NCBI RefSeq assembly: GCF_006345805.1
Contig: NC_043004.1
Span: 93,558,001 to 93,622,000 of the forward strand
Direction of reading: 5' to 3'
Length of the DNA: 64,000 nt
Source: Octopus sinensis
Lineage: Eukaryota
This document shows, piece by piece, positions 33,888 to 64,000 of the stretch (positions are counted from its first letter, which is position 1; the number at the start of each line of letters is the position of its first letter). The notes beneath the pieces were generated by a model. The model saw nothing but the letters and a program-made list of their open reading frames with translations. It did not search any database and was not told the DNA's origin. A program made the translations under genes and the position numbers.

Positions 33888-34044
33888 ATTTATTAATGAT
33901 TTTTGTTGTAATCTAAAAAAAATTATTTAAATTCAAAACGATTATTATTATTATCCTTCTTATAATAACAATTTTCTGTATGTATGTACTTATGTCATGA
34001 CATTATGGCTCAACAACATTTTACGTATACACGACAAACATAGT

Positions 34045-43060: not shown

Positions 43061-44149
43061 GAGAATAGAGTCAAAGTCTGGGGTAATTTCCAAAATTTAC
43101 ATCCTAATATCCTTTCCCCTGGGAATGCAATGCATAAATCAACATCTTATGAACTTTAAGGTACCAGCTCATAGCATAAACTTCATCACATAACAATGTT
43201 ATTCAACATACACTGTTGAATCCTATATGAATGAATGTTTATCTAATACTTCTGAATCTTATAATTATGTACAAGCAGATTTACTAAACTGAAATTGTGT
43301 TATTAACAGCATGATGTGACAATCATTACCCCAGCTTGCCAGTATGACCAGGTCAGGATAACTGAGGTCAGCTGGATATCCAGCCGTGAAATCTGCTGAT
43401 GAAGACCTTCAGAGGAAAGCCCAGAAGCAAGAGAAATGAAAGACATCAAAAACCACTGGATATTCATTTCCACTGGGCAGGTGTCATTATACAACTATTG
43501 CAACAATATAAAGAAATTAGCTGATAACAGACTGATATGCAGACATGTCACCGGTGCCTGTGTATCATCACAATACACATATTTTGATGTCCTTACCTAA
43601 TTAATTGATATCTAAAATAAGTACAATGACATATTTGGAGAATAGGAATAGTTAATTCTTATAGTTAATTAAAGCTTCATTACCAGATTGGTACTAGGGA
43701 TAAAAGATAGAGTGGATCTCAACAGGATTTTAATGCAGAGCATAGATGGAAGACATAACAATCACAAGGTATTTTGTATGATGCTCTACTGATTCTGCTA
43801 ATCTACTGTACAGACTATGGAATTAACAGTGACCAATGGAAGTAAGAAGGAAATAGAGGGATTATAGATAAATCAAACCTAATTCTCACAAATGCTTTAA
43901 AATATAGAAAACAGCATGTAGCATTTTTAAGAGCGGTTAGTAAAATTTTCTTGTAGCTGTTAAATTTTTTTTTTAAACAAAGCCAAAAATAAATAAAAAT
44001 CAAAATTTCAAAGTAAAAAAACCAGAGAAACCAATCCAAATACCAAGCGAACCAACCCAACACAGGCAATGCTCAAGGCACAAATTCTTTTTGGAAAAAG
44101 AAAAAAAAAAGAAAATCTGCGCGTGCTAAACAAAATTTGATGACTTTAC

Positions 44150-44221
44150 CAAGAGCACATTCAAAGATGCCGCAGATGTTGGTCTTGGCGGGCGGAATGG
44201 TAAGATGTTGTCAAGGGTTAT
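44150..44221 (-). CDS. Candidate 24-codon cassette exon (ITLDNILPFRPPRPTSAASLNVLL)
   Basis: T-rich tract then actatag|, donor TTG|gtaaag, 72 nt, phase 0-0, CpG-containing in an AT-rich intron. Confidence 0.4.
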
Positions 44222-44994
44222 CTATAGTTTAGACCCAACATGAGAGTAAAAAACAAAAAAAAAAAAAAAGATGAAATAATGGTAAAAATTGAAGAAAATA
44301 TAAGCCAAAATTTTTTAAATAATTTCAGAAAAAATGTCCAAATAACCCATAATATTCTGTGTACAAGGGACAAAGTATACGTGAATAAACATAATGCAAA
44401 TCTACTAGAGGAGGGTACAATGCTGCAAAACCAATTTAAACATTGTCACTTGTTTGGGACTAAGTAAAATGAAACTGGTGAATTGTCATGCAGACAAATT
44501 CTTTAAAATAAAATTCTACATACCTTGTTCTGACTATGGTAGAAATAAAGACAAATCAAATATTGAGGAAAGATTAGGTTTATGCCTACAGCTAATAAAC
44601 TAGAGTTGTTAGTAGATAATTAGCTAATATGTATGAATGGATGAAAATGTGTGTGTATGTGTGTGTGAGAGAGAGAGATTGGGATTTCATGATATGAAGG
44701 ATGTGCTATGTTGTTTCGTGAGGAATTGGAGGAAACAAGGAAATTTGATCTTATATATATATATTTTTTTTAGAAGAATTTAATTAAATGTCTATGAAAG
44801 AGAGAGGGATGGAGGGAATGAAAAGCCTGAATTAGAAGGAAATACATGAGTTTGATACAGAGGTAAGAAATTTCTATATGAAGAATGTGGTTCAGTTATG
44901 GTTTTATATCAAAATGGAATAACTACAAGGAAAAGACAAATGAAAATTGGCTTTGTTTGCAAAGGAAGACAATTTTAAATACTTCTAAACATAT

Positions 44995-45390
44995 AGGTGC
45001 AGGAGTGGCTGTGTGGTAAGTAGCTTGCTTACCGACCACATGGTTCCGGGTTCAGTTCCACTGTGTGGCACTTTGGGCAAGTGTCTTCTACTATAGCCTC
45101 GGGCTGACCAAAGCCTTGTGAGTGGATTTGGTAGACGGAAACTGAAAGAAGCCGGTTGTATATATGTATATGTATATATATATGTGTGTGTGTTTGTGTG
45201 TGTCTGTGTTTGTCCCCACCCAACATCGCTTGACAACGCTTGACAATGGGGGTGTGTTTACGTCCCCGTAACTTAGCGGTTCGGCAAAAGAGACCGATAG
45301 AATAAGTCCTGGGGGTCGATTTGTTCGACTAAAGGCGGTGCTCCAGCATGGCCACAGTCACATGACTGAAACAAGTAAAAGAGTAAAGAG
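44995..45390 (+). mobile_element. SINE family A copy
   Basis: Near full length; 10-bp internal duplication CGCTTGACAA. Confidence 0.87.
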
Positions 45391-45834
45391 TATATATCAA
45401 ATGCCCAAATTTTGATGTGAAAATAATGACAAGATTTTATACGATTTTTTTTTATTTGACTATGTGGAAGAAAAAGAAATTTTAGATGTGAGGCATAGTT
45501 GAGTCAACTCCAGTATATAACTAGTATTCATCGGTCATAAATGAATTAATGCAGAATCAGTTCCCGATGTGATTTAAAATCAGAATGCAAGTAAACAAAA
45601 TTAGCTATATCATGCATTTAGTTTGGTACTCTGCTTCATAGTCTATCGTTTATATTGGACATGTAAATATATTGTAAAAACTCAAACTAAGCAATTAATT
45701 TGAAATATCTTTTTAGATAAAGTATTTAATAAAAATACCTTTATTAACTGACAGGTTTCTGTCACTGAAATGTGATCATACCTTCAAATAGTTAGGTTGA
45801 CCTCAATATATATATTTCAGTTAGGTAATTATTT

Positions 45835-46005
45835 TTATCAATTTTATCTTTTATTTTATTATTTTATATTATTTTATTATTATATTATATTATTTTATTA
45901 TAATTATATTATATTATATTATTATATTATTTTATTATTATTTTATTATATTATATTATTTTATTATTATTATTATTTTATTATCTTTAATTTATATTTT
46001 ATTTT
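45835..46005. repeat. (TATTA/TATTT)n AT-only low-complexity tract
   Basis: Almost no G or C over ~170 bp. Confidence 0.9.
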
Positions 46006-47095
46006 TATCTGTTTATTGAAGGCTAAGCTATTTATTTGAACATAAAAGGATGCAACTCAACACACCAGCAAACATACCTAGATTTTACTCCCACACTAAT
46101 TTTGTACTATTGAGTGTATTCCAAATACACTAGTGTATTTGAAATAAGGTAATGTTAAACTGTCATCTGTCATACATCAGAAAGGAGACTTATTGGAAAT
46201 TCTAAATGAAAAGTTTGAGCATGTTTCAGCAAGGGAAAATTAACCAAACATTTCTATCTGAAATTGGGATAGGACAGTGGATAAAGTAAAGCATCACTGA
46301 AAGGCAGAGTTTGCTTTTGATCCACTTTTAAATGTCTGTGCCTTATCAAACACTGCACATGGAATACAAGTGGCCTCTTCTTTATCTTTGGTTTCTAAAT
46401 TTCTTTTGAAAGCCTATATGGTACAGTCCACCATACAACAAATATGTAAAAAAAAAAAAAAACACAAAAAAAAACAAAACCAAAAAAACCCACTAATTCA
46501 AAACAAATCCATTGTTATTTTAATGATCATCATTACTTATTCTACGGATGAGATGGCTTTTGAAATTTCAAGTATTAGTATGTTGTTAGATCTAGCATAT
46601 TACAGCACAATGTCTTTAGTGCTAACAACTTAACCATAGAATGGAAATGCAATCTGTTGCCAGTAATCAAAATGATGTACCCTTTCCAGGAACTCAATAC
46701 ATTTGCTAAAGTAATACTAAGATGTGAAATTATAACTGCATTAATTATTATAATTGATTATTATAATGTTATTATCTTAACTTCTACTTTACATCAACTT
46801 TATTGTTTGGGATAGTTTCCATTCCAAAATGTTTGTATATATATGTGTTGTTAATATTTTCATAGATATTATGTATTTTGTGGGAATTAGGGTGGGGGAA
46901 TAATATAAAGAAAATAGCCATTAATAAATTTTATCAATTGACTAATTTATATCAGTATCATTAAGATAATGTGATATTACTGACAATAACAATATCCTGG
47001 AGAAGTATTAGATTTTGCTAAAAGATTTCTTAGATATTTAAGATATTTAGATTTTAAAAAATGTCTTTGAATAATGCATTCCAGTGTTGCAAAAG

Positions 47096-47130
<35 letters not shown>

Positions 47131-47660
47131 ACAACTATAACTTTTGTTCTACACAAACTACTACTGTGTAGATGATGATAAACAGAAGCAGATAATGAAG
47201 GACTAAATGATTTTACATAAAAACAATAAATAAAGATGTTATTTGCATAAACGTAATGGAGAGAGAAATTATTTGCATAACCGAATGATCACATTAAATC
47301 ATTTTTTAAAACAAAAGAACAAAATTAAAACAATGCTATATACATAAATAATTAAGTTACACTTAAACACAAAATAAACAAAATTAATATTTTTTAGATT
47401 CTGAACAAAATTATACAAGATTATCATTAATTTTAAAATTTAATATTTTTCTAAGTATAACAATTAAATATTTTAAGATTAATATAAAAAAAAAAAACTA
47501 AAATTATAACAATAAAAAATAAAGCATTAAACAAATTATAACTGTGTAATATTTTAAAAAATACAATTAAAAACTCAATGCACCTATATATTTTAACAAA
47601 AATAGTAATTAAAATTTGAAAAATTTGTAATTTTTAGTAGGTAAGAAAAATGTAGACATA

Positions 47661-47692
<32 letters not shown>

Positions 47693-47754
47693 TGTGTGTA
47701 TTACATATGCACACACACTTCTTACATTGGAGGTTTCCAGTCACCAGTGGTTAA

Positions 47755-47965
47755 TTTAATATTCTAATTTTGGTACGAGGCCAGCAATTTTGATGGTAGG
47801 AAAGCAAATTAGTTATCTCAACCTCAATACTTGACTGGTATTCTAATTCATCAACCGGGACAGGATAAAAGACCCTGATGACTTTGGTGAGAGCTGAACA
47901 TAAAGAACTGGAAGAAATGCCACAAAACATTTCGACTGATACACTGACAATTCTGCCAGTCCGTC
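47755..47965 (-). mobile_element. SINE family C copy
   Basis: Diverged family match. Confidence 0.65.
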
Positions 47966-49513
47966 AATTTAATATTAATAAACAGCTCGGTCAATTTCAA
48001 TATTTCCATACTGGAGGAGCAGAGGATTTTATTTATATTTGACATGTTAACAATTTAACTGAGAGCTAGAGACTATACTCCAATCTATTCTCCTATACAT
48101 TAGTCTGATATCAAGATTTGATATTGACTTTATGGGTCTCCTACTAGTACTAGGCATGTCTAGTACCAGATGGTTTGGTACTTTATGAGCCACTATTTCA
48201 GTTATTAGTTTACTCTACAAGCAAATAAATGAGTTGCAAGATTTTTTTTACATTGAGCTTCAGGCCTAAACTTAGATATGGACACCCAAATGTTTTACTA
48301 GAAATAATGACACGTAGCCACTGGACTACTATTTACTTTGCTGTAGTACCTAGTAGTTATGGTAAATAAGTCAAGTAATGAGCTGTTTTTCTGCAAAATG
48401 CACACCAGCCAGAGCAGACAGCAGATTCATTTCAAATGCAGTTTACCTCATTAATCAATACATTCAATAAACCACAAAAGACCTTTGGTAAATAGAAACC
48501 TCCAAAGTAAACATTTATAACAGGATATTTTTCTTTGGTTCTTAAATCATAAATATACATTGTTGTTTTTTTTTTTCAAAGATATTAACAAATGAATAAA
48601 GAGGAAACAGAATAGCACATCAAATAAGATTAGTTGAAACCACTAATATAGGTTAGAATAAACCACTAATATGGTAAGCAAATGACAGCAGGAAAGGAAA
48701 ATTAAGGAAGATGGTATGTAGTCAAGGACAAAGGATTAGTACATCTGTAAATTATTTTAAAAATTCGTTATAATTGATAGAAGTTTCCCTTAAACTGTCA
48801 ATGTCATTGAGAGTATAAGAACTCTTGGTCTTGAAATTTGAACTTGAGAGTCCCAAATTGCAAGAACTGATTGAGTGAATTTCAGTTTTTGAGTTGTGTG
48901 GATCTCAAAAACTAAAGAAATTCAAATCAGAAGAAATTAAAGAAATTCAGATCTTAAGAAGTGAAGATAAAAATTCAAAGCATAATTTGAAGATTACAAA
49001 GAAAAAAGTTTAAAATAAAAAAAATAAAAGCTCATAATTAGAGTTACATTAGAATACAGTTGTTGATATTGTTGTTAGTCAGCAACTTAACTTCAATTCC
49101 CTTGTAAGATTATTGGACTTCACTGAAAATGTCATGACATTTATGCCAATCCTTAGTGACCAAGCAATTTTTCATTGATCAATATAATTTTATTACTAAT
49201 TAGTCAAATTACAATCCCATAAAAAAAAAAGAAATAATGAGCTTAGAATAATAATTACAACACATCAATTTGTAAAATAAACATAAATTATCAGTGCTGC
49301 AATAAATTAATTCTTAAAGTTAATAAAATATAAGACAAATACACATATATTAATATAATATATATTTGCAATAAGTTATAGTTTGGTTTTCTTCTTTAAA
49401 TATTCATATTTATAAGTAAAGAAAATCCTGTAATGAGAATTTATAACAAAATATCCTTGTAAATAGATATTCTTTTTAATGCTTGAGTAGATTTTTAAAC
49501 TTTATCAATAACC

Positions 49514-49920
49514 CGCAGGAGTGGCTGTGTGGTAAGTAGCTTGCTAACCAACTACATGGTTCCAGGTTCAGTCCCACTGCGTGGCATCTTGGGCAAGTGT
49601 CTTCTGCTATAGCCCCGGGCCGACCAATGCCTTGTGAGTGGATTTGGTAGACGGAAACTGAAAGAAGCCTGTCGTATATATGTATATGTATGTATGTGTA
49701 TGTGTTTGTGTGTCTGTGTTTGTACCCCTAGCATTGCTTGACAACCGATGCTGGTGGGTTTACGTCCCCGTCACTTAGCGGTTCGGCAAAAGAGACCAAT
49801 AGAATAAGTACTGGGCTTACAAAAGAATAAGTCCCGGGGTCGATTTGCTCGACTAAAGGTGGTGCTCCAGCATGGCCGCAGTCAAATGACTGAAAGAAGT
49901 AAAAGAGTAAAAGAGAGAGT
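49514..49920 (+). mobile_element. SINE family A copy
   Basis: Full-length match to the family. Confidence 0.87.
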
Positions 49921-51140
49921 AACCCTTTTATTTGAAATCTTAGAACTAATATTTTGCTGCATAATAAATGCAAAACAAAAGGCATTATTTGAGTAAAAAT
50001 ACTAGTAGTGAGAGACATCTGTTCCAAGACAAAATATCCCAAATTGATATCTCAAATCTACTTTATACACATGTGTGTGTGTGTGTGTGTGTGTAAATAT
50101 ATATGCTATGTATAGTTGTGTCACTTAGTTTAAAGTCATGAGTATACTGACCAAACTGTTAATCATCTCTGTTTATTAATTTCACTTACGGCTCAAAATA
50201 TATAATAAACATATTTTTTAAAATGCTTTTAGACAATGTATGTTTAAATACAAATGTTTAATTAGCATAATGCAATTATTGACAGCGTTATTAAACCACA
50301 AAGATAAACATCAATAATTTAGAGAACCTATTAGAAATAAATCACTTGAATTTTAGTATATTATATTATACTCTTAATAAATCAAATAATTAATAATAAC
50401 TATTTCTGTTTTCATAAAATCCTTTGTGATAGGCAAATGAAAAGGCTGATCATCAGAGACATGATCAACAATTGTTTAACTATAAGCTGAAATGTACTTT
50501 TTGAGCCACTGCTGCTTATATAATACTTATATAATATCTTCAATGAAAATACAATATACTGACATCAGGGCAACAAAAATAGAATACTGAATGGATGGAC
50601 TAATGAATTTACTGATTGTTGATGATGGACAGGAAAAATGACTGTCATCATTTTCAGATATCAAGTACAGGATGGTGTCAATTAAAGCAGTTTAGTCTTG
50701 TGAATGTGTTGCCTAGGAAACAATATTTATTTTTCTCGAAAAACTATTGTATGTAAATTGAATTAACTCAGAAGTATTAGAATTGGTTCCTGACAGACTT
50801 GTAAAATATTTTGCGTTGAAATTTAATTTGTTTGGGTTTGATAGCTATTCAACATCATACAAGAGAAGAAATTCATCCCAAGTACAAGAATTTGAAAGTT
50901 AAATACTGTGGTAGCAATGTCAGATGATACAATTCATGAGACCAACAGCATCAATAAAAGTATAGCCAATCTGGAAATCTGGGTGAGGACAACACTTCAA
51001 CATATCAAGAATCATTTGGATCAGTCATTGATTTTCATATGACAATGAGTTGATGTATATACAACTGGAATAATCAAGGAATTCTTCAAAAGTAAGAAAA
51101 TGCAAGAGCAGCAGTTGGTTACACAAGTCCTGTATGTTAA

Positions 51141-51363
51141 CCCTTTAACATTAAACCAACCATATCTGGTTCAAACATTCTACCTTTTTGATGTCCAAAC
51201 CAGGCAGATCTGGTCTTTCACATCTACCCTACAATGTCCTTCTAAAAATAAACAATCACATCACTGAAATCTTGAGTTATGCATGATTAATTCAAAACAA
51301 GGTGAATAAATAAGCATTGCACTTGATTTGACAGAATAATCTGGTAAACTGAATGCTAAAAGG
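51141..51363. mobile_element. piggyBac-type MITE, degenerate right end
   Basis: TTAA|CCCTTTAAC; internal match to the family. Confidence 0.7.
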
Positions 51364-51763
51364 TGAAATCTGATAGAAAAATTATGGTAATTGATTCGAC
51401 ATGCACACTGACATAAATGAATTGTATGATTATATCATGAAAAAAGGAAAGGAAATTTCAGGTATAATGTGATCATCAAGCCTGTAGATTCAATGCCTCA
51501 TAAATATGATTCTGCCACAAGATTTTATGTGACTTGATTTTCAGTTCACATCTACTTTAAATGTTTTTAAATTGAGTGACATTTATTTTTGTGGCCTTAT
51601 TAATACTGCCAATAATTGCATTAGGCAAATTTTTAAAATGTTTGAGATTAAAATATCATTTAAATGAATAAGAAAAATTAATAAAAACAAAACTAATTAA
51701 ATTTAATCATTTGAATACTCAGCTTTACCTTAAGTAACCTCACATGTGTGTATGTGTGTGAGC

Positions 51764-51833
<70 letters not shown>

Positions 51834-52230
51834 TGGTATGTTTGAAGGCCACATTAATGCAGTTTGAAGATTAAATATCAATATGAGAGAAAAGAAGAAT
51901 ATTAGAATGTTGCCTCGAAAATAATTAATGGCCCTGATATTTCTGATATAAACACCCTTTCAAATGTTTAAGAGGTTTAGAAAGAGAGAAAATGAAGGCC
52001 AACTGAGGGTAGCATGGCTTTGTGCAAATAGATTTCAAAATTCTGAGGATTTTATGGAAGAAAGTATGTTGACAGAAATGGACAGTCACTTTCTTTCTCC
52101 CTTACCATTTTAAATATATATAAACAAGTTGTTATACTTAAAATATCAAGGCCATTGAATATTCTTTAGCAATCCAGTACCCTTGTTCTTATTAATATCA
52201 TTAATATTTAACCTTCTAATTGCATTGCTG

Positions 52231-52232
<2 letters not shown>

Positions 52233-52272
<40 letters not shown>

Positions 52273-52293
52273 GGAGGGAGGGAGGGAGGGAGG

Positions 52294-52338
<45 letters not shown>
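52233..52338. repeat. (GA)n/(GGGA)n polypurine tract
   Basis: Read directly. Confidence 0.95.
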
Positions 52339-52360
<22 letters not shown>

Positions 52361-52439
52361 GTATTAGAATTGTAGTGAGGTGGAATTGATTAGAATTATA
52401 GAATGGGTAGGAAAGAAATTTATTGGGTGTTGTGCTACC

Positions 52440-52960
52440 ATTTTAGAGAAGTGGAAAACTTCTGGTAAGCTGAGGCCCAGGTTTGGGTTCAGACTTCCAT
52501 CACCAGATATCATTGAAACACATGTGATGTTAACCAGGAAAGAGTCTTGATCCTCATGTAACAAAGCTGTCTCATTATTTTGCTTCCTCAGAATATCTTT
52601 TCAAACAATATTTCTTCAATAAACAACAAGATGATTGTGACAAGGCAATTGAAGAATTTAGCAGTCTGAAAGAACTAAACATCCATCACAAGTAACCAAT
52701 GAAAGTAGAAGTCAGAGAAGCGATTTGATTGTTAACATTAGCATTGTTGCATCACTGAACACTAGGTTTCACAGATTTTTCTACAACACATTTCTGACAA
52801 TAATATCTGTTAACTACCCTGCCATATTTCTTTTGGCTGTAGCTAGGCCTCTCTCCGGGGTAAAAACAGAGGTTATTTTTAATGCTAGAATGAAATGTAA
52901 ATAAAACACAACGTAAGTGCCAAGTGTCTCGAATGACCAGAGAACAACTAATCAAGAAAT
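52440..52960 (+). mobile_element. Possible highly degraded LINE RT remnant
   Basis: Weak FGFR..S.DI-like motif near 52480 with many stops. Confidence 0.25.
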
Positions 52961-53228
52961 ATTACAATAGAGCCAAATGGCAAGCCCTGTACAATTCTGC
53001 TGGTATTATTCAACTTTTGGAAGTAAAGCAGAAATCCTCAGTCTCATCACTCGACCTGTAGGGAATAATAGCCAACCCCACCACAAATAACATGCTAAAG
53101 TTTTAAAAAATGGAAAGTTACATTGAATAATGCAGTTTTAGGTTTACAAAAGCCTTAGCATGGTTGTGGATAGAAATCTTGATCAGGTCTGCTTGATCAG
53201 GGTTGATTTTTGGACAAATGATAACAAT

Positions 53229-53638
53229 AGGCGCAGGTGTGGCTATAGGCGCAGGAGTGGCTGTGTGGTAAGTAGCTTGTTTACCAACCACATGGTTCTG
53301 GGTTCAGTCCCACTGCGTGGCACCTTGGGCAAGTGTCTTCTACTATAGCCTCGGGCCGACCAAAGCCTTGTGAGTGGATTTGGTAGACGGAAACTGAAAG
53401 AAGCCCGTCGTATATATGTATGCGTGTGTGTGTTTGTGTTTGTCCCCCTAGCATTGCTTGACAACCGATGCTGGTGTGTTTATATCCCCGTTACTTAGCG
53501 GTTCGGCAAAAGAGACCGATAGAATAAATACTGGGCTTACAAAAGAATAAGTCCCGGGGTCGATTTGCTCGATTAAAGGCGGTGCTCCAGCATGGCCGCA
53601 GTCAAATGACTGAAACAAGTAAAAGAGTAAAAGAGTAA
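53229..53638 (+). mobile_element. SINE family A copy with a duplicated 5' end
   Basis: AGGCGCAGGTGTGGCTAT precedes AGGCGCAGGAGTGGCT. Confidence 0.87.
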
Positions 53639-54109
53639 TAAAAGATGGAACATTCTCATTGAATCGTCCCATAAGTATGACTAATAGAGATATGTATATG
53701 GAAAACATAGAGGTGTTGTCGTTGTTAAGCCACAGGTAAATTTTAAAGCAGCAGACGTGTGATCAAAGGTGTCCAAGCCATAACGCTGAATATGTCCTTT
53801 CTTTTGTAAGACAATAGGGTGTGACTTGAGATAAAGGAAACAAGTCGAGGGACCATGGGATCACGAAATGATGGCCAACAGGTAATGCAATTCAATAACG
53901 TTTTGTGGGATCTGAAGCTCCAAAACTGACTTTTCCAGGAGCTTCCTACCTCTCCAATATATCATTTGTACAATAATGGATGCTATAGAGTAGTGTTACA
54001 ATTTGTCCCCTAATCACTGTAGGGAGGTAAGGAGGAAGAGGAAGAAGCAGAAATCACATGATTAATAAGCAGCAGTACTAATAAGACAGATGTCTGTAAA
54101 GAAAACAAT

Positions 54110-54325
54110 ATAATAATTTGCAACTTAGGCCCAAGGCTACAACTTTGGTGGGATGAAGGGTATGGTCACAGTCAATAATGTTAACCCCAGTACTAGACTG
54201 GTACTTATTTTATCGACCCAAGGAGGATGAAAGGCTAAGTTGACCATGGCAAAATGTAAAGGGTTGCAACTAAAATACTACAATGCATTTTGTTCAACGC
54301 TCTACTAATTTTGCTAATCCTTTAA
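54110..54325 (-). mobile_element. SINE family C copy
   Basis: Family match. Confidence 0.7.
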
Positions 54326-54583
54326 AATGATGAAAATAATAATTTAGCAAAGTTAGAATATATATCAGACAACCATCCAACCAACCAGCAAAATATTAAA
54401 AAAAAAAGTAAAAATTGTACACCAGCAGGGAACTACTATTTTAGAGGTTACTTAGGTTATGGCTGTAGTGGTGGTAATGGTGGTGGTGGTGGTGGTGGTA
54501 GTGGCTGATACTAAAGGTGGTCAGTACATCATAAGACACAAGTTTGGAACAAATACAAATACACACAAAGCAGTTCATAGTAC

Positions 54584-54826
54584 CTGCCCATATGACTCTT
54601 CTTTGCCGACACCACGCCCCAGGAATGTCCCCGTACCCCGAAACAGATCTTGAGACTTTCTCTGAATGCCTTCCCAGATTTGCTCATGAAATGATTGGGA
54701 TTTGATCATGCCATTGCCTTTGTAAGTGGAGCCCCGTGGTGTTGGGCTATCCTGCCAGTCTTCCAGAGTTTCCTCGGAACCAGAGAACTGGGACAACATA
54801 TCACAGTTCATCAGAACCCATTTTGC
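54584..54826 (-). CDS. Candidate alternative or lineage-specific exon of the DOCK7-like gene, 81 codons (AKWVLMNCDMLSQFSGSEETLEDWQDSPTPRGSTYKGNGMIKSQSFHEQIWEGIQRKSQDLFRGTGTFLGRGVGKEESYGQ)
   Basis: Long polypyrimidine tract then ttctag|, donor CAG|gtacta, 243 nt, open only in phase 0, GC-richer than its flanks; no homology recognised. Confidence 0.65.
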
Positions 54827-55232
54827 CTAGAATACAACAGGGAGGAGATGAAGAAGAAAAAAAAAAAAATAGAAGAGAGACTGGGGTAAACGATAAGGGC
54901 TGCATCTACCTGGCTGCAGCCACAGACTCAGTCGTCTTGTTTTACGGTAGAAAACAGACAGCCATGTGAACATTAGCAACATTGCAGTGCATCAACTGCA
55001 AGATTTTGGAAGCAACAACACTTTACACATCATATATATTACATAAAGTTGAATGATCACACATTTCAATGAAAGAACAAACCCATGACAACAGAGAGAA
55101 AACAGACCCACCCCATCTTACCCCAAAAAAGCAAAAAATTTGGTGAAAATGTCAAGTTGGAATTGACCATAAAGTCAATTTTAACTTGACTCTTTCACCA
55201 AGATAATTTTCAGATTAATTTCTAATCCTTAA

Positions 55233-55426
55233 ATCCTCAAGCATTTAAACAGGCTGTATCTGACCCGAATATTCTACCTGTTTTATGTTCAAACCAGCAA
55301 GATAGTCTAAAAATAAAACAGCCACATCATCAAAATCGTGAAGCTACAAGATAACACATAATAAATTCAAATCAATGGAAATAAATACGCATCACATTTG
55401 TCATACTAAATCAAAATGCTAAAGAG
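55233..55426. mobile_element. piggyBac-type MITE, degenerate
   Basis: TTAA at 55229 and 55427; internal match to the family. Confidence 0.7.
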
Positions 55427-55432
55427 TTAAAC

Positions 55433-55995
55433 CAGGGGTCTACAACTACCAGACCAAGGATCATTTGATACCAGGCCAGACAGAAGGAATAAATTCTAAA
55501 ATATTATTTCCTTTTTATTGATTAGTACAGTCTGCAGGGTGGTTTTTTTTCACATTATATATGTATTGCAAATGTAATATAGGTTGCTATATTTTATTCC
55601 ATAATGGCTATCTCTGAAGAGCGCAGGGTTACATAATCGGAATGCTACCTAACACTCCGCTGAACCCCTAGCACAAAACTGATTGGTAAGATCAGCTGTA
55701 ATGGATATATAATACAGTACACTGCAAGGTGGTTGGTTTAGGAAGGGCATCCAACCATAAAAACCATGCCAAAACAGTCACAGAAGTCTGGTGCATTCTC
55801 CTGCCTGCCTGACCAGCTCCTGTCAAACTATCCAACCCATGCCAGCATGGAAGGCAGACATTAAACAATGATGATGATGACGATATATATATATGTAGTA
55901 ATTATGCACATGATCCCCTGGTCTGTGGAAAAACTTTCTTGCATGAAACCAGTCCACGGGGCAAAAAAAAAAAAAAAAAAGGTTGGGAACTGCTG
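55433..55995. mobile_element. hAT (Charlie/MER1-like) non-autonomous element containing a family B fragment (55720-55881)
   Basis: Termini CAGGGGTCTACAAC / GGTTGGGAACTGCTG. Confidence 0.65.
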
Positions 55996-56237
55996 CTTTA
56001 AATCTAATTAGGAATTGTCTAAAAATCTTTGTATGTGGACATGTTTGTTATATAAACAAACTTCAGTAACTATTTTTTGTTTCATTTTCATTGATGATTT
56101 CCAGATATATGATCAAAAGTTTTGAGAGAGAATATAAGAGCATAATAAATTATGCATACCATAGTTTGGTTAGTGTATAAAGGAATATAGTTAAATTCTC
56201 TAAGGCATTTGTGATTCTGCTATCCCTCTATTCTTAA

Positions 56238-56735
56238 TAATAATGATGATCATCATCATCATTGTTTGACCGTGGTCGAGACAATGGAATTTACTATGCT
56301 ACGCTAGACTTCACGGTCCATCATGGCATTACGGAGGTCCTGTTGCTGGATGCCTGTATCCCTGGAGATTACATCAAGGTAGGAGAGTGTGCGCCCTCTG
56401 GCATTGCGAGTAGATGGCTTCCAGAGGAGGAAAGTAGAAATTACCTCTTTTTCAGCTCTATAACAATGTCCAGCAAACTGGACTCTCCTACCTTTCACAA
56501 GAGATGATACAGGTGGTAGTTTCCCATATATTTGCATTTTGGTTGGATGGCGCCTCCATGAGAGATTTTGAGCTCTCATAAGGAGGCGAGTGTAGGTTCC
56601 ATCCAACCGCCTCTCAAGCTTCTTTGATAACGTCCAGGTTTCTGAGCCATATAGTAGAATTGGTTCGACTGTGGCTTTGAAGATTTCAAGTTTGAAGTCT
56701 CTACTTAGATTTGATGACCAGATCTTATGCATGTC
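56238..56735 (-). mobile_element. RTE/RTE-X-like LINE 3' fragment with an intact 142-aa ORF2 end
   Basis: IFKATVEPILLYGSETWTL...LDGTYTRLL...FAGHCYR...LLWKP; (GAT)n tail. Confidence 0.85.
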
Positions 56736-57567
56736 ATGTCATAATGATGATGATAACTCATGGTAACGAGGCTGACAATTATAGAAATAGTAAAATAAAT
56801 AAATTCATAAACAAGCACGACATCAGAAAGTTGGAAGTGTTTTAGCTGATTGAATCAACCCCATTTCCTGATTGGAAGGATGAAAGTGAAGTAAATTTTG
56901 GAGCGGTTTGAACTCAGAACATGAAGAACCAGAACAAATGCTGCAACACATTTTGTCCAACACTATTACGATTCTGCCAACCCATTGCTCATAATAATAA
57001 TAATGATGATGATGATGATGATAATGATGATGATTATGACCCTTTCTACTATAGATAATAATTCTTTGTGTTATGATGACAATGATTATGATGATGATGA
57101 TGATGACTGCTTGGTGTTGTTGCTTCAGGAAACAGCTTGCAGGAAAGATGCAGAGCAAATGTCAGCTTGTTTAGACCTGAGTCAAGTTTTGTGTGTCTGT
57201 GTGTGTTATGTACATATATAAATATAAAGAAATATGCATATTTATGTCTTAAAAAAGAAATGTGGCTTCATTTTGTTACATGTTACAGCATGCCATAGAC
57301 ATTTAGCGAAAAGTAGGACAAAGATTTTTTAGAATATGTTATTGTTTTTTTTTTTTTTTGTTTTTTTGTTTTTTTGTTTTTTGAAGTCCAGTAGCCACAC
57401 TCTTAATATTACCAGGTTCCACAGCAAGGCAGCAACACTGGGTGAGAGGTGAAGGAAAGAAATTGGACTGCAGCGTTAATGTACTAAGCAGAAAATAAAA
57501 AAAAGAATGATAATAAAAGAAACTCAAGATCATGCAAAGGCAAGAAGTTACACACATACACATCAAT

Positions 57568-57629
57568 TATATATATATATGTGTATATATACATGTATAT
57601 ATATTATATATATATGTAATACATGTATG

Positions 57630-57681
<52 letters not shown>

Positions 57682-57701
57682 TGTATGTATATGTACAGAT
57701 A

Positions 57702-57736
<35 letters not shown>
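57568..57736. repeat. (TA)n/(TG)n compound microsatellite; similar tracts at ~16890-17003, 19515-19555, 27345-27426, 30200-30278, 51765-51830 and 63690-63723
   Basis: Read directly. Confidence 0.95.
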
Positions 57737-57737
<1 letters not shown>

Positions 57738-59299
57738 AAGAATGTAAGGAGTACAGGGAAAGACACAAAGGAAAGAATACAATCAGGAGAAAAGATTCCA
57801 TTCAGTCAACCTGCAACACATACACATGTATGCATATATAAATGAATAAACATTTAAAATGCTTCAACCAAATTATTTGACCACAAGCGCAGCCGAGAGA
57901 AGAAAAAAAATCCCAAAAAAGACAGAGGATGGATGGGTTGAAGATAGACACAGGACATGCTGAAATCATGCCAGTATGGGGAAAAAAGTGGATGTAAAAC
58001 TATACTGTTTTATAGTGCAGGAAAACATGAAATAGTCAAAAGACAACACAACCTGATACACCTCACTAAAAATATAACCAACAAATAAAATAAAAAAAAA
58101 GGGGGCAGGGGGAAAGTAAATCCCTATAAAATTATTTGATGTACTCTATTGAGCCTTATATTATTAAAAAGGATGTAGCTTTAAAAGGAAACAGAAACCT
58201 TCTAAAGAATAATTTTGTTGGTGAGTGGGAGCTATTGAGACCTTACACTGGCATGGAGGTCAACAGAGAGGTATAATTATATTAACCTCAGTGTATGGCT
58301 GGTATTTAATTCATCAACTCCAGGATTGGAAGGTAGAGTTCTATTCTGGGAGAGATGAAGGAACAAAATTACCGGTTTCAAATTTTGGCACAAGGCCAGC
58401 AATTTTTGGGGCAGGGAGAAGTTGATTACATCAACCCTAGTGCTCAAGTGATTTCTTATTTTATTGACCCCAAAACTAAAATGTGTCTAAGGCTACATGA
58501 TCCAATGTCTTCATTAAGACTATAAAATATGATTTTATGGAAATTTGGTGCCATGTCTAATGGGTTAAACAACTCATAAAAATTCTTGTCAGTGACACAA
58601 AACCTTAAAAAGATAGAGGCAAAGTCAAGTGAATCAAGCCCAGTACATAACTGGTGCTTGTATCATAGACAATGTCAAGAACATTACAGATATCAGCAAG
58701 ATCTGAATTAAGAAGGAAAAAAAAAATAGAGGGACCAAAAATTTAGACCTGCATTTTCTTGGTTTGTTTTTCCCCTGGATTTAACACTAAATATATATAC
58801 AATGCCCAACATGATATACAGCAGGGATGCATATGACTCCGATATATTACTAATGAAAAACAAATAGCTATATTGCCGAATAAATACGATATAGGATTTT
58901 TAACTGGATATATAAATGTAACATTGTGCTTTATGACATTTTAGCACTGAACAAAATATAAAGTTTGTCTACTGATGTTTTTCATTTCCAACTAAAAAAA
59001 AAGTATTATTATAGAATACTAATTGTATATCAAGGTGTATCTGGAGACATACATACCTGACCAGACACCAACAAATAAGTATGTGATAGTCTGTCCAACC
59101 TTTTGCACACTAGAGGACACACACATGACACTGCCAGAAACAATAGTCCACAAACAGGTAAGGAAAATTATACATACATGCATAATTGAAAACATGATTT
59201 TATTTCATCAAATACTGATATTACTATAAATCAATTTATCATTATTACTCCATAAGGTATGGAATATTTTTTTGCGGATTTGTTGGAAGTGAGTGGGTC

Positions 59300-59540
59300 A
59301 AATAATAATAATAATCCTTTCTACTACAGGCACAGGGCCTGAAATTTTGACAGGAAGTGGGGGGGGGGGCAGTCAATTAGATCGATCCCAGTATGCAACT
59401 AGTACTTAATTTATTGACCCTGAAAGGACGAAAAGCAATGTTGACTTTGGCAGAATTTGAACTCAGAATGTAAAGACAGACGAAATGCCACTAAGCATTT
59501 TGCCCACCGTGCTAACAATTCTACCAGCTTGCTGCTTTAA
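59300..59540 (-). mobile_element. SINE family C copy
   Basis: Family match. Confidence 0.8.
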
Positions 59541-60681
59541 TAATAATAATAATAATAATAATATAATAATAATAATACTAAGAAGAAGGAGAATATAATT
59601 TTTCCAACCATCCATGTTAGAAAATAATAATTATAATAACGACAGGTCAATAGCATCAAGTTTTCAATAAAATATGCTTCAGTATATATATACATAAGTG
59701 TGTATGTTGTATCATGCTTTTCACATGCAAACAAAGCTAAAAGGTTAATCCATGCCCAATAATTAATTTCAAAACAAATAATGACTTCAGTGTTGCAGCC
59801 ATTTTTTTTTTCTTGAAACCTTTATCAATAGATTGGTTGTATATGATATTGTTTCATATTTGTTATATTACAAACACAGGGGAAGGGAATAAAAAAAATA
59901 CAAAAAAGTGCTTTTTGTTATGTTGAAGACTTAGCTATATAATACAATATTAGAAATATTGGTTTTTATTTATCCCAATAGGTATTTTTATGCAATAATA
60001 TGCATGATGTCTGTGTGTTTGGAGTTGTTCAAGAATAAACTTTTGGCTTAATAGAGAAATAATTAGAAAGAGAATGAGTGAGTATGTGTGTGTGTGTGTG
60101 TGTGAAGTCATAAAAAGAAATAATCTTCCAAGTATGTTTTATAACAGTTACCTACAACATGATCCAAGTCAACCACCAACTGTCCATAGCAAAGTTTTAT
60201 ATCCTACTGTGTTGCATAATGCAATTAAAAATAGAATTTATTTCAAGAATTTGGTGGTCTATAAAGTTTTAATCATGAATTTTGGGAATCTCCTTCTGAA
60301 AAAAGTCATGTATCACTACTTTATATTAAAAGTTACATGATTTTTCTTTTGTTTCTAAATATTGACCCATGGCCACAGTTTTGAGGGAAGAGGATGTAAT
60401 TGATTTAATTGCCCTCCAACAATTTAACTGCAGTGAGATTTTAATTAAGCACATAAAGAGATGTAAATATAAACTGCAGAGCATTTTGTCTGGTATGCTA
60501 TCAATTCTACCAAGCCATATAAAGACACACACACACACAAAGACTTCCACATGGTTTCTGCCTCCAAAATTTCACTCAGTTCATTGATCAATCAGAAGCT
60601 ATGGTAGATGACAATCACCAAAATGCCATGTAATATCAAATGAATTCAAATTGACATAGCTGTAATGTGAATGTATTAATA

Positions 60682-60993
60682 GTCATACGTAAAAGGGCAC
60701 CATTTGAGCGTGATTGTTACCAACATCGCCTTACTGGCACCTGTGCTGGTGGCATGTGTAAAAAGATTCGAGCGAGGTCGTTGCCAGTACCGCCTGACTG
60801 GCCCCCGTGCCGGTGGCACGTAAAAAGCACCCACTACACTCTCGGAGTGGTTGGTGTTAGGAAGAGCATCCAGCTGTAGAAACTCTGCCAGATCAAGATT
60901 GGGGCCTGGTGCAGCCATCTGGTTCACCAGCCCTCGGTCAAAATCGTCCAACCCATGCTAGCATGGAAAGCGGATGTTAAACGATGAGGATGA
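60682..60993 (+). mobile_element. Family B RTE 3' UTR copy
   Basis: Shared core and tail. Confidence 0.82.
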
Positions 60994-61724
60994 CTGTATT
61001 CGAGGAAGTATCCTCGTTTTTGAGATCCTTACACTGACCTATGTTTATCTCGTGTTTCTAAAGCATCACCAGCATTGCATCATGTATACTGGTTTTAAAA
61101 TACTCTCCTTAGCTCTTAGCAAAGGAGTGCATTTTGAAACATGAGTTGACACTGATATAAACATTATATTTAACAGAGTCTGTGCAAATGTATACATAGT
61201 GTGGCAAATAGGTTAAAGAAAAATGACCACATAATTCTGAATATGTACATAACCAGAGAGAAATTTCCCATATGATTGTCTATATGAGGTGTGTGTGTGT
61301 GTGTGTGTGTGCATAAAATGAGAGAAGGAGATGAAGTGTACATGTTTTGTGCTATGCTTTAGGAGGAACTATCTTTAGTAATACCCCACCACTCTAACCT
61401 GGTTAGCCTTAATGTGTAAGTAGGAAACCTTTTGATAGAACCAGGAAGTATTTGAGAGGATTTCAAAATACCACAACAAGAATCACTTGGTGTGCAGATG
61501 TACAGCGAATGCCTCAAGTTGAAACAGGGTGTTAAGAGTCATGCTTGAAGACTGACAGAATAACCACCCGGCCCGATGTCACCCATGAAAATACAAATCT
61601 GATTAATCGGGAACATCATCACAAAGACAATACAAAAACAATCAATAATAAACTTCACAGAATCACCACAGTAGAGTTGCTGGCCTTGTTTGTATTGCAG
61701 TCATTAAGTTATTGTTTATAATCA

Positions 61725-61943
61725 TAATAATCCTCTCTACTCTGGGCACAAGGCCTGGAATTTGAAGGGAGTGGGATAGTCGATCACGTCAAACCCAGTA
61801 CCTAACTGGTACTTAATTTATCAACCCCAAAAGGATGAAAGGCAAACTCAAACTCAGTGGGATTTGAACTCTGAACGTGAAGACAGAAGAAATGCCACTA
61901 AGCATTTGGTTCATCATGCTAATGGTCCTGCCAGCTTGCCACC

Positions 61944-61945
<2 letters not shown>
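61725..61945 (-). mobile_element. SINE family C copy
   Basis: Family match. Confidence 0.8.
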
Positions 61946-61995
<50 letters not shown>

Positions 61996-62424
61996 TAACA
62001 TCATCTGTACTACTAATAATAATAATTTCTAACATAGGCACTAAGCCATGAATTTAGAGGAGAGATTTGTGAATAAAATCAATGTAGTTCTTGAGTGATG
62101 ATTTATTTTATTGACTACAAAACAAAAGGATGAAAAATAAAGTAAACTTTAACATGATTTGAATTTAAAATTGAGTCTTTTTGATTCTAACGCACTTGAA
62201 ACTGCTCCTGGTTCTATGATTCAAACTCCTAGTTTTAAAATGATCTTAAAAATGCTTCCATCAGAATTTCATGTCACTTTATGTTCAAACTCCAGCTTAA
62301 TAACGACAAAGTCATTTTCATTAACTCTGTTAGTTTCAAAATTAATTGAAACAAACAAAGGTTGTGGTATTTCAACAGAAATATTGTAACAAAAAAAAAA
62401 AAAAAGTAAAATGTATGTAACTAA

Positions 62425-62645
62425 ATAATGGCTTGAAATTTTGGCAAAAGGCCAGCAACTTCAGGCAGAAATCGATTACACTGATCCCAGTAGTCAACTG
62501 GTACTTATTTTATCGACTTTCCTCCCACAAAAGGATGAAAGGTAAAGTTGAACTTGGTGAAATTTGAACTCAGTATGTAAAGACAGACGAAATACTGTTA
62601 AGCATTTTGCCTGGCATGGTAATGATTCTGCCAGCTCACCACCTT
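62425..62645 (-). mobile_element. SINE family C copy
   Basis: Family match; further partial copies at ~56820, ~58370 and ~63420. Confidence 0.8.
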
Positions 62646-62662
62646 TATGTAACTAAATATTA

Positions 62663-63205
62663 TAAGGCACGTGGATCAGTTGTTGGAGCAACAGGCTCAC
62701 AATCATGAGGTAGTGAGTTCAATTTCCAGACCAGGCTTTAGTATTGCTCTTTACTTTACGTTGCTCCAGTTCATTCAGCTATAGAAATTAGTTCATAAAA
62801 AGCACCATCCGATCGTGGCTGTTTGCCAGCCTCGTCTGGCACCTGTGCCGGTGGAACGTAAAAAGCACCCACTACACTCACGGAGTGGTTGGCGTTAGGA
62901 AGGGCATCCAGCCGTAGAAACATTGCCAGATCAGACTGGGCCTGGTGCAGCCTTCTGGCTTCCCAGACCCCAGTTGAAGCGTCCAACCCATGCTAGCATG
63001 GAAAGCAGACGCTAAACGATGATGATGTCACTGGTGCCAAGCTGTATCGGCCTTTGCCTTTCCCTTTGGTGGTGCGGAGAGGGGAGGTTGGTATGCATGG
63101 ACGACTTCCGGTCTTCCATAAACAACCTTGCCCGGACTTATACCTTGGAGTGGGAACTTTCTAGGTGCAATCCTATGGTCATTCGTGACCGAAGGAGGTC
63201 TTTAT
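62663..63205 (+). mobile_element. SINE family E head plus module F tail, split by a family B insertion
   Basis: Head at 62663-62795; tail GGTGCCAAGCTGTATC...GACCGAAGGAGG at 63030-63200. Confidence 0.7.
62796..63027 (+). mobile_element. Family B RTE 3' UTR copy nested in a family E SINE
   Basis: SINE head lies to the left and SINE tail to the right. Confidence 0.82.
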
Positions 63206-63687
63206 TTAGGGATGGGGTGGTGACAAAACCATTACAGTAACTTAATGACATTAATACATGAACAGCAACAAACATTAACAAACAAGAAAGACACAAACTA
63301 TAAAGTCACAAAATATACATAACACTCATCCACCCCACCCACACGTCAAATTATTTAGTAAAAATAGTTTATAAAAACCGACACAACGATGATGATGATG
63401 GTGATGATGACGATGATAATTACAATGGTTTCTTACACAGCAAGGCCACAAATCCTGAGGGAGGGGTACCGTTGATTTAATCAACACTAATATTTTGATT
63501 AGTATTTCTTTTATTAACGAAGGGAAAGATGGAAATAAATCAACCTTGACAGGATTTGAACTTAAAATGTAAACTAAACACCGCAAGGTTTATTTTCTCC
63601 ATCCTTCCCTGGAAGTTCACCATTAATGAATAATAGTTAATTATAGTCACAATAATAATAATAATAAAAGAAAACAAACAAGAAATG

Positions 63688-63725
<38 letters not shown>

Positions 63726-64000
63726 CAAAGACTAAAATAGAAAAACGGTTTAATGTTATCAGTAAAAAACAAAAATAAATTTCTTTCATAAAAATAGATT
63801 TTGTTAATTACGAATTCAAATGAATCAAAGCAGACATGCAAAAGAAGAATTTAAAAGAAAAAGAAATGAGCAGATCTAATGTTAGTGGTGACTTGTCTCT
63901 ATATGTTTATCAAGAAGCCTGTTGAGTCAATTGAAAAATTAGGTTAGTAAAGAAGAGCAATATTGAAGATGCTTGACAAACAGAAGACATTGAAACAAAA

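What the first reader, a model, noticed from the sequence alone, without database searches (positions are those of the whole stretch)
54584..54826. 81-codon exon with no recognisable homology inside an oversized DOCK7 intron: short DHR-2-only isoform or lineage-specific insert
Seen: strong acceptor and donor, 243 nt, open only in phase 0, which splices in frame to the GKK exon at 36860. It has in-frame ATGs (MNCDML) and an S/T/P-rich stretch (DSPTPRGST, KSQS). Known: vertebrate DOCK7 runs directly from ...FEYK into GKK..., and no FEYK exon is visible in the window. Inference: either a cassette insert, or the first coding exon of an internally promoted isoform lacking the N-terminal DHR-1 membrane-targeting domain.
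Basis: partly seen in the sequence, partly recalled or inferred. Interest (0 to 1): 0.72.

Follow-up and report, generated by a model that had tools for sequence, protein, structure and literature searches.

The report
Conserved in-frame DOCK7 coding exon
The 243-base segment is a real protein-coding exon of the DOCK7 gene that other molluscs also carry in the same intron, so it is ordinary gene structure rather than an orphan insert or the start of a short isoform.

Summary
The claim of "no recognisable homology" is wrong.

- **Homologues exist.** An exhaustive HMMER search found 12 (E down to 5e-18). One is the annotated DOCK7-like protein of the sea slug Plakobranchus ocellatus (GFN96684.1), where the segment sits exactly between ...NFEYK and GRR...
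- **Same position elsewhere.** In ten fetched genomic loci the exon has the same boundaries (ag|GC.AA.TGG ... CAG|gt). In eight it lies upstream of the GKK exon of a DOCK7 orthologue, and in three the FEYK exon is also seen upstream.
- **It is coding.** Lengths are 225 to 357 nt, always a multiple of three. dN/dS is about 0.1 to 0.3, and similarity drops to background outside the exon.
- **Absent in other lineages.** Human DOCK6 (PDB 9vm2) and insect-like transcripts run FEYK|GKK directly.
- **Not a start exon.** The acceptor and the first codons (AKW) are conserved, but the ATGs are not.

Whether inclusion in octopus is constitutive or alternative could not be tested. The encoded loop is mostly disordered, with one predicted helix. 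Interest is low.

The parts
54584..54826 (-). Internal coding exon of the DOCK7 (DOCK-C) orthologue. It is 243 nt and 81 codons, phase 0-0, and encodes AKWVLMNCDMLSQFSGSEETLEDWQDSPTPRGSTYKGNGMIKSQSFHEQIWEGIQRKSQDLFRGTGTFLGRGVGKEESYGQ.
   Evidence: sequence and frame. (homologues, E down to 5e-18; profile search E down to 3.5e-33). (same intron, same boundaries, lengths divisible by 3). (dN/dS 0.1-0.3).
54827..54880 (-). 3' splice site: acceptor AG at 54828-54827, preceded by a pyrimidine tract of about 50 nt. The AG is part of an in-frame TAG.
   Evidence: Acceptor score 6.5 bits against -2.9 to 12.7 for the 17 real exons. The homologous ag|GC.AA.TGG acceptor is present in all ten loci.
54578..54583 (-). 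5' splice site, CAG|gtacta. It is weak to moderate and has no G at +5.
   Evidence: The homologous CAG|gt donors in the other species are also weak to moderate, 1.3-3.1 bits.
36861..54583 (-). Intron of 17,723 nt between this exon and the GKK exon. It is rich in SINE-like repeats.
   Evidence: The same intron is 1-5 kb in the other loci.
54827..64000 (-). Part (at least 9,174 nt) of the upstream intron. The FEYK exon lies beyond the window's end.
   Evidence: No FEYK-like exon was found by motif scan or tblastn. In L002, L007 and L008 the FEY[KR] exon lies 6-7.5 kb upstream of the homologous exon.
36713..36860 (-). Next DOCK7 exon (GKKAMSQYSQQTFRRSVDMKTRLEEAILGHSNARTEMMLRRRQTSFSNS). It starts on a complete codon.
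2731..36860 (-). C-terminal half of the DOCK7/DOCK-C gene. It has 17 exons that include DHR-2 lobes A, B and C.
   Evidence: tblastn and exon model. (Pfam DHR-2 lobes A, B and C, E 1e-54, 5e-31 and 1e-29).

Best explanation
Window 54584-54826 (minus strand) is a genuine internal protein-coding exon of the animal's single DOCK6/7/8-type (DOCK-C) gene. It lies in the intron between the exon ending ...FEYK and the exon starting GKK..., and it is flanked by phase-0 introns on both sides. Both inclusion and skipping therefore keep the reading frame, and skipping would give the FEYK|GKK junction seen in vertebrate DOCK6 and in insect-like transcripts.

The exon is orthologous to one present in gastropod DOCK7 and in at least eight other unnamed invertebrate genomes, so it is old and under purifying selection.

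It adds about 80 residues inside the C-terminal part of the ARM superhelix, about 300 residues before DHR-2 lobe A. The added segment has these features:
- An invariant acidic S-x-E-T-L-E-D-W motif.
- A Ser-rich basic stretch.
- A predicted amphipathic helix, HEQ[IL]WEGIQRKSxD[LF][LF].
- Low-confidence, probably disordered sequence elsewhere.

Inferred, not shown: the segment is a surface loop that serves as a regulatory or docking element, probably controlled by phosphorylation. The analogy is the disordered Akt-phosphorylated Ser1194 loop that lies about 60-120 residues upstream in human DOCK6.

Whether the exon is constitutive or alternatively spliced in this animal is undetermined.
For: Homology:
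- phmmer of the 81 aa against 1.84 billion representatives gave 12 true hits, E 5e-18 to 2.5e-4.
- One hit is the 1737-aa GFN96684.1 'dedicator of cytokinesis protein 7-like [Plakobranchus ocellatus]'. It reads ...SNFEYK|AKWATPS...SKEDSPAQQ|GRRAAAQCSQQTLKKSVDMK and has DOCK-C2 plus DHR-2 lobes A-C.
- A profile search gave 22 hits, E down to 3.5e-33.

Position:
- In L001-L008 the homologous ORF lies on the same strand, 1-5 kb upstream of the GKK exon of a DOCK7 orthologue.
- In L002, L007 and L008 the FEY[KR] exon is 6-7.5 kb upstream.

Boundaries: ag|GC.AA.TGG and CAG|gt in all ten loci. Exon lengths are 225, 231, 237, 243, 243, 258, 264 and 357 nt, all divisible by 3.

Selection:
- pN is 0.06-0.46 against pS 0.43-0.91.
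- dN/dS is 0.10 (L003/L008), 0.16 (L005/L008) and 0.11 (window/L001).
- Nucleotide identity is 0.62-0.78 inside the exon and about 0.35-0.5 in the flanks.

In the window: it is the only such AG..ORF..GT segment of at least 240 nt, and it is single-copy.

Structure: AlphaFold2 with the alignment gives a helix at residues 46-63 (pLDDT about 72) and low confidence elsewhere.

Context: human DOCK6 (9vm2_A) aligns up to FEYK1304 and resumes at GKK1305, with nothing matching the insert. PMC13503879 describes the disordered DOCK6 loop 1185-1242 that carries the Akt site Ser1194.
Against: - No transcript evidence for this animal could be obtained. The protein collections searched contain no cephalopod DOCK7 at all; the best match to the constitutive exons was 73% identical.
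- The only spliced evidence is a gene model from another mollusc, not an mRNA.
- The donor site is weak.
- The octopus copy has lost the [RK]Sx[ST]xP motif that 20 of 24 sequences carry, so part of any shared function may not apply here.
- The regulatory-loop mechanism rests on analogy and on a low-confidence model (mean pLDDT 60).
Confidence: 0.88

Rival explanations
1. The exon is the first coding exon of an internally promoted short isoform that starts at MNCDML and lacks DHR-1.
For: In-frame ATGs are present at codons 6, 10 and 40. An in-frame TAG sits at the acceptor, so an upstream non-coding exon could in principle feed into it.
Against: - The acceptor site and the codons upstream of the ATG (A-K/Q/N-W) are conserved in all ten loci.
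- The ATGs are not conserved. The L007 exon has no Met, and L002 has its only Met at codon 31.
- ATG contexts are poor: ctgATGA and gatATGT.
- In Plakobranchus the segment lies inside a protein that has the DOCK-C2/DHR-1 domain.
Confidence: 0.03
2. It is a chance open frame or non-functional pseudo-exon in a large repeat-rich intron, and is never spliced into mRNA.
For: - Open frames of at least 55 codons are common in the window: 203 on the minus strand, mostly low-complexity.
- The + strand also has 64-87-codon open frames here.
- The donor is weak.
Against: Protein-level conservation across at least nine other genomes, with conserved boundaries, lengths always divisible by three, dN/dS of 0.1-0.3 and a sharp fall in identity at the exon edges. 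A chance ORF would show none of these.
Confidence: 0.02
3. It is an exon of a separate gene nested in the DOCK7 intron, conserved in synteny, rather than part of DOCK7.
For: Nested genes in DOCK-C introns are known in vertebrates, for example ANGPTL3 in DOCK7 (from my own knowledge, not tested here). No octopus mRNA was available to link the exon to DOCK7.
Against: - It has both an acceptor and a donor, so it needs partner exons on the same strand, and none is seen.
- Its phase (0-0) fits the flanking DOCK7 exons in every species where they are visible.
- The Plakobranchus model joins it to DOCK7.
- No Pfam domain or other protein family matches it.
Confidence: 0.03
4. It is an insert specific to octopus or cephalopods, created recently by exonisation of a transposable element.
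For: The intron is full of SINE- and LINE-like sequence. The first, word-indexed protein search found nothing.
Against: The 54503-55139 island has no other copy in the window. The exon has orthologues in a named gastropod and in many other genomes at the same gene position.
Confidence: 0.01

Closest known systems
DOCK7-like protein of Plakobranchus ocellatus (GenBank GFN96684.1), residues about 858-966
   Same: It has a homologous segment in the same place, between ...NFEYK and GRR/GKK.... It shares the AKW start, the S-x-[ED]-T-L-E-[ED]-W motif, the KSQSLHEQLWEGIQRKS.DLLRG helix and the SK[ED][ED]S..Q end. tblastn against the window gave 52% identity over 54 residues.
   Different: The gastropod segment is 129 residues long, with a Gly/Ala/Ser-rich insertion. 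It carries the KSHTLP motif, which the octopus copy lacks. It is a gene model, not an experimentally characterised isoform.
Human DOCK6 (PDB 9vm2_A) and vertebrate or insect DOCK-C proteins at the FEYK|GKK junction
   Same: The flanking sequences are the same...LWVLKN...FEYK and GKK...DMK.RLEEAILG...RWRK.... The DHR-2 domain is also the same.
   Different: There is no insert. DOCK6 runs FEYK1304-GKK1305, and insect-like transcripts read FEYKGQK.
Mammalian DOCK7 alternative exon 23 (93 nt, ESRP1/2-regulated cassette)
   Same: It is an in-frame cassette that adds a short Ser-rich segment to a non-catalytic region of DOCK7 (PMC5764326 and PMC6788855).
   Different: It is at a different position in the gene, far upstream of FEYK, and no sequence similarity was detected. 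Alternative use is shown experimentally for exon 23 but not for the exon studied here.
Disordered Ser1194 loop of human DOCK6 (residues 1185-1242), phosphorylated by Akt and dephosphorylated by PP2A
   Same: It is a disordered Ser-containing loop in the C-terminal part of the ARM domain, 60-120 residues from the insertion point. Its phosphorylation shifts the dimer-tetramer equilibrium and activity (PMC13503879). This is the functional analogy proposed here.
   Different: It is not homologous: the only alignment between the two was insignificant (domain 1). Nothing is known about phosphorylation of the mollusc segment.

Membership tests
DOCK-C (DOCK6/7/8, Zir-type) guanine nucleotide exchange factor gene | DHR-2 catalytic domain with lobes A, B and C | tested here: met
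   The spliced translation of the 17 window exons hits Pfam DHR-2 lobes A, B and C at E 1e-54, 5e-31 and 1e-29.
DOCK-C (DOCK6/7/8, Zir-type) guanine nucleotide exchange factor gene | Closest relatives are DOCK6/7/8 rather than DOCK-A, -B or -D | tested here: met
   Window exons are 50-84% identical to the Plakobranchus DOCK7-like protein. That protein's best PDB matches are DOCK6, DOCK7 and DOCK8.
DOCK-C (DOCK6/7/8, Zir-type) guanine nucleotide exchange factor gene | DHR-1/C2 domain and N-terminal region | not testable with these tools
   The 5' half of the gene lies outside the window. It is present in the Plakobranchus orthologue.
Conserved internal coding exon between the FEYK and GKK exons | Orthologous position: same intron, same strand | tested here: met
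   In L001-L008 it lies upstream of the GKK exon. In L002, L007 and L008 the FEY[KR] exon is seen upstream.
Conserved internal coding exon between the FEYK and GKK exons | Conserved splice sites and reading phase | tested here: met
   ag|GC.AA.TGG ... CAG|gt in all ten loci. Lengths are 225-357 nt and all divisible by 3. The flanking exons end and start on complete codons.
Conserved internal coding exon between the FEYK and GKK exons | Purifying selection on the encoded protein | tested here: met
   dN/dS is 0.10-0.30 where dS can be estimated, and pN is well below pS in all 21 pairs. Conservation is confined to the exon.
Conserved internal coding exon between the FEYK and GKK exons | Inclusion in mature mRNA of this animal | not testable with these tools
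   No cephalopod transcripts or proteins are in the collections searched. The only inclusion seen is in the Plakobranchus gene model.
Alternatively spliced cassette exon | Both inclusion and skipping isoforms exist in the same species | not testable with these tools
   Symmetric phase 0-0 and uniformly weak donors are compatible with a cassette but are not evidence for one. No skipping or inclusion transcripts from molluscs were found.
Alternative first coding exon (internal promoter isoform) | Conserved start codon, and no need for an upstream acceptor | tested here: not met
   The ATGs are not conserved (L007 has none), while the acceptor and the pre-ATG codons AKW are conserved.
14-3-3 mode-1-like phospho-motif ([RK]-S-x-[ST]-x-P) | Motif present in the segment | tested here: not met
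   It is present in 20 of 24 sequences (KSHTLP, KSASLP, KSSSLP). It is absent from the window's copy, which reads YKGNGMIKS there. Binding was not tested anywhere.

The most novel reading that the evidence does not exclude
The exon is an old regulated cassette, mollusc-wide and perhaps lophotrochozoan-wide or older, that was lost in insects and vertebrates. It would install a phosphorylation-dependent docking loop in the ARM domain of the DOCK-C exchange factor: an acidic TLEDW motif, a 14-3-3-like KSx[ST]LP site and an amphipathic helix. This loop would sit next to the region where Akt controls DOCK6 oligomerisation. The octopus lineage has rewritten the 14-3-3-like site while keeping the other two elements. 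Tissue-specific inclusion, for example in neurons, would then tune Rac/Cdc42 activation.
Probability: 0.25. Interest if true: 0.4.

Novelty: new member of a known kind. Interest (0 to 1): 0.2.

Why it matters
Mainly for annotation. The exon should be included in, or checked against, the DOCK7 gene model of this genome, and it should not be reported as an orphan or lineage-specific novelty.

It also shows that invertebrate (at least molluscan) DOCK-C proteins carry a conserved loop of about 80 residues, absent from the vertebrate and insect proteins studied so far. The loop sits in the part of the ARM domain where phosphorylation is known to regulate DOCK6. That makes it a modest, testable lead for how DOCK-C activity is regulated outside vertebrates.

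There is a methodological point too. The word-indexed protein search returned nothing for this peptide, whereas the exhaustive HMMER search found the homologues. A first 'no homology' result was therefore a false negative.

Tried and rejected
- **Word-indexed protein search with the 81 aa.** It returned no candidates. This proved to be a false negative of the method, not absence of homologues.
- **Search with the downstream constitutive exons.** The collection holds no cephalopod DOCK7 (best 73% identity), so octopus annotation and transcripts could not be consulted.
- **Family and structure libraries.** Pfam on the peptide and on the antisense ORF found nothing. Rfam on 53000-56500 gave only sub-threshold hits. 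A PDB profile search with the exon alignment found nothing significant.
- **Looking for the FEYK exon in the window.** It lies outside the window.
- **Transposable-element origin.** The exon island is single-copy in the window, so this was rejected.
- **Naming the species behind L001-L010.** Neither near-identical matches to named proteins nor run accessions in papers gave names. Only Plakobranchus is named.
- **Spurious hits.** P0095 and P0100 from the HMMER search were rejected as chance matches of a repeat motif.
- **Literature.** No paper mentions DOCK7 together with octopus.
- **Splice-site strength as a test of alternative versus constitutive use.** It was inconclusive.

Full report
**The observation**

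On the minus strand, 54826->54584 is a 243-nt segment that translates without a stop to AKWVLMNCDMLSQFSGSEETLEDWQDSPTPRGSTYKGNGMIKSQSFHEQIWEGIQRKSQDLFRGTGTFLGRGVGKEESYGQ.
- It follows a pyrimidine tract of about 50 nt and ctAG, and is followed by CAG|gtacta.
- All five other frames contain stops.
- It is in phase with the exon that starts GGT AAG AAA (GKK...) at 36860.
- The exon is 50% G+C in a 36% G+C window, and about 1% of shuffles of the exon remain open in a given frame.

I built a model of the 17 downstream DOCK7 exons (36860 to 2731). It is anchored by tblastn and gives Pfam DHR-2 lobes A, B and C. On a crude splice matrix:
- The candidate's acceptor scores 6.5 bits. Real exons range from -2.9 to 12.7.
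- Its donor scores 0.5 bits. Real exons range from -0.7 to 7.8.

The acceptor is therefore good and the donor weak, not 'strong'. The candidate is the only phase-0 open AG..GT segment of at least 240 nt with acceptor >=4 and donor >=0 on either strand of the window. The island 54503-55139 has no other copy in the window, while SINE-like repeats flank it. No FEYK exon is in the window.

**Homology**

The word-indexed protein search with the peptide found nothing. A control search with the constitutive exons showed that the collection holds no cephalopod DOCK7 at all, the best hit being 73% identical. That negative result therefore carried no weight.

The exhaustive HMMER search of 1.84 billion representatives gave 14 hits. 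Two are chance matches to a repeat protein. Twelve are true homologues (E 5e-18 to 2.5e-4). One is a 1737-aa protein named 'dedicator of cytokinesis protein 7-like [Plakobranchus ocellatus]', GFN96684.1. It reads ...LEILFLSVSNFEYK AKWATPSVVKQWRRTWSEDTLEEW...RPKSHTLPKSQSLHEQLWEGIQRKSVDLLRGGSNLLTRTNSKEDSPAQQ GRRAAAQCSQQTLKKSVDMKSRLEEAILG.... The homologous segment thus sits exactly at the FEYK|GKK junction of a full-length DOCK-C protein that also has the DOCK-C2 domain. A profile of the aligned segment (A1) found 22 proteins, E down to 3.5e-33. All are short ORFs called on genomic contigs that read through the splice sites as 'Q|AKW' and 'Q|V'.

**Position, boundaries and selection**

I fetched ten loci, L001-L010. 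L003/L004 and L005/L006 are near-identical pairs, so at least eight different genomes are represented besides the window and Plakobranchus.
- **Position.** In L001-L008 the homologous ORF lies on the same strand, 1-5 kb upstream of the GKK exon of a DOCK7 orthologue, with further DOCK7 exons downstream. In L002, L007 and L008 the FEY[KR] exon is 6-7.5 kb upstream.
- **Boundaries.** They are the same everywhere: ag|GC.AA.TGG and CAG|gt.
- **Lengths.** They are 225, 231, 237, 243, 243, 258, 264 and 357 nt, always a multiple of three.
- **Flanking phase.** The FEYK exons end and the GKK exons begin on complete codons.
- **Substitutions.** Non-synonymous differences are far below synonymous ones in all 21 pairs. 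dN/dS is 0.10 for L003/L008, 0.16 for L005/L008 and about 0.11 for window/L001, where dS is near saturation.
- **Flanks.** Nucleotide identity is 0.62-0.78 inside the exon and falls to alignment background (about 0.35-0.5) within 50-100 nt on both sides.

This is the signature of a coding exon, not of a chance ORF, a conserved non-coding element or a transposon fragment.

**What it is not**
- **Not without homology, and not octopus-specific.** See the homologues above.
- **Not a conserved translation start.** The acceptor and the first three codons (A-K/Q/N-W) are conserved. The ATGs are not: L007 has no Met in the exon, and L002 has its only Met at codon 31. The octopus ATG contexts are poor.
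- **A separate nested gene is unlikely.** That would need partner exons on the same strand, none is seen, and the one available gene model joins the exon to DOCK7.

**Distribution**

Human DOCK6, solved at full length (9vm2_A), aligns to the gastropod protein up to FEYK1304 and resumes at GKK1305, with nothing matching the insert. Insect-like transcript ORFs read FEYKGQK or FEYKGKK. It is also present in several unnamed invertebrate genomes whose flanking DOCK7 exons look lophotrochozoan. It is absent from the vertebrate and insect-like sequences available here. Whether it was gained in the lophotrochozoan line or lost elsewhere is open.

**How it probably works**

Shown:
- Invariant or near-invariant positions cluster in S-x-E-T-L-E-D-W, in K36/K42, and in the stretch [HY]EQ[IL]WEGIQRKSxD[LF][LF]RG.
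- AlphaFold2 with the alignment predicts a helix at residues 46-63 (pLDDT about 72) and low confidence elsewhere (mean 60).
- The insertion point is about 300 residues before Pfam DHR-2 lobe A, so it lies in the C-terminal part of the ARM superhelix.
- 20 of 24 sequences carry [RK]-S-x-[ST]-x-P, which resembles a 14-3-3 mode-1 site. The window's copy does not.

From the literature: in human DOCK6 a disordered loop (1185-1242) in the ARM domain, 60-120 residues before FEYK, carries Ser1194. Its phosphorylation by Akt lowers activity and shifts the dimer-tetramer balance (PMC13503879).

Inferred: the mollusc exon encodes a second surface loop of that kind, a mostly disordered and probably phospho-regulated docking or auto-regulatory element anchored by one helix. 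I put this mechanism at roughly 40%. The exon's identity as a real DOCK7 coding exon I put at about 0.9.

**Constitutive or alternative?**

This could not be decided. Phase 0-0 symmetry, the fact that skipping recreates the universal FEYK|GKK junction, and the uniformly weak donors (0.4-3.1 bits, none with G at +5) all fit a cassette. The flanking constitutive exons also include weak sites, however, and I found no mollusc transcript across the junction. The known mammalian DOCK7 cassette is exon 23 (93 nt, ESRP-regulated). It lies elsewhere in the gene.

**Verdict**

This is a real, conserved, in-frame DOCK7 exon. It is already present in at least one public gene model and has not been described in the literature searched. 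It is ordinary gene structure with a modest functional lead, and interest is low.

Noticed in passing
window 55139-55202: A 62-nt near-perfect hairpin lies in the intron about 310 nt upstream of the exon. On the gene's strand it folds at -32.8 kcal/mol with z = -7.0 against shuffles. It gives only sub-threshold Rfam miRNA-family hits and has no other copy in the window. It could be an intronic miRNA precursor or a small inverted-repeat element.
   Followed up: partly
window 56307-56738 (minus strand): A 144-codon open frame (...KATVEPILLYGSETWTLSKKLERRLDGTYTRLL...) looks like the C-terminal end of a LINE ORF2. Only a weak, sub-threshold Pfam DUF6451 hit was obtained.
   Followed up: partly
window 53244-53637 and 55729-55890 (and many other places): There are two SINE-like repeat families. 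The first has at least 6 copies in the window at 81-94% identity, and the second at least 13 copies at 72-76%. They account for many of the long 'open frames' in the window.
   Followed up: no
window 54469-54502: A (CCA)n-type microsatellite, reading as a His run in one frame, sits about 80 nt downstream of the exon's donor site.
   Followed up: no
window 34831-34852 (minus strand): The exon after GKK has two in-frame acceptors 21 nt apart...ctcag|GTGACCGTACACCTCCACCAG|GGGCTT. My automatic model chose 34831. Homologues contain the GDRTPP residues, so 34852 is probably the acceptor used. Alternative use of the two cannot be excluded.
   Followed up: partly
P0095 and P0100: Two very long repeat proteins with GNGTLTPRGITYQGQGMIKNQ units match the octopus-specific stretch SPTPRGSTYKGNGMIKSQS (E 2e-7 and 7e-4). 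Multiple repeated stretches inflate the score, so I took these as chance.
   Followed up: partly
L003/L004 and L005/L006: Each pair comes from one sample and is 90-100% identical around the exon, but the distance to the GKK exon differs: 11192 against 13138, and 15091 against 15518. They are haplotypes with intron indels, or recent duplicates of the DOCK7 locus.
   Followed up: no
protein search tools: The word-indexed search missed every homologue of the 81-aa peptide. Even with the profile it did not return P0097, although that protein is in the collection. Negative results from that tool for short, divergent eukaryotic exons should not be trusted.
   Followed up: yes
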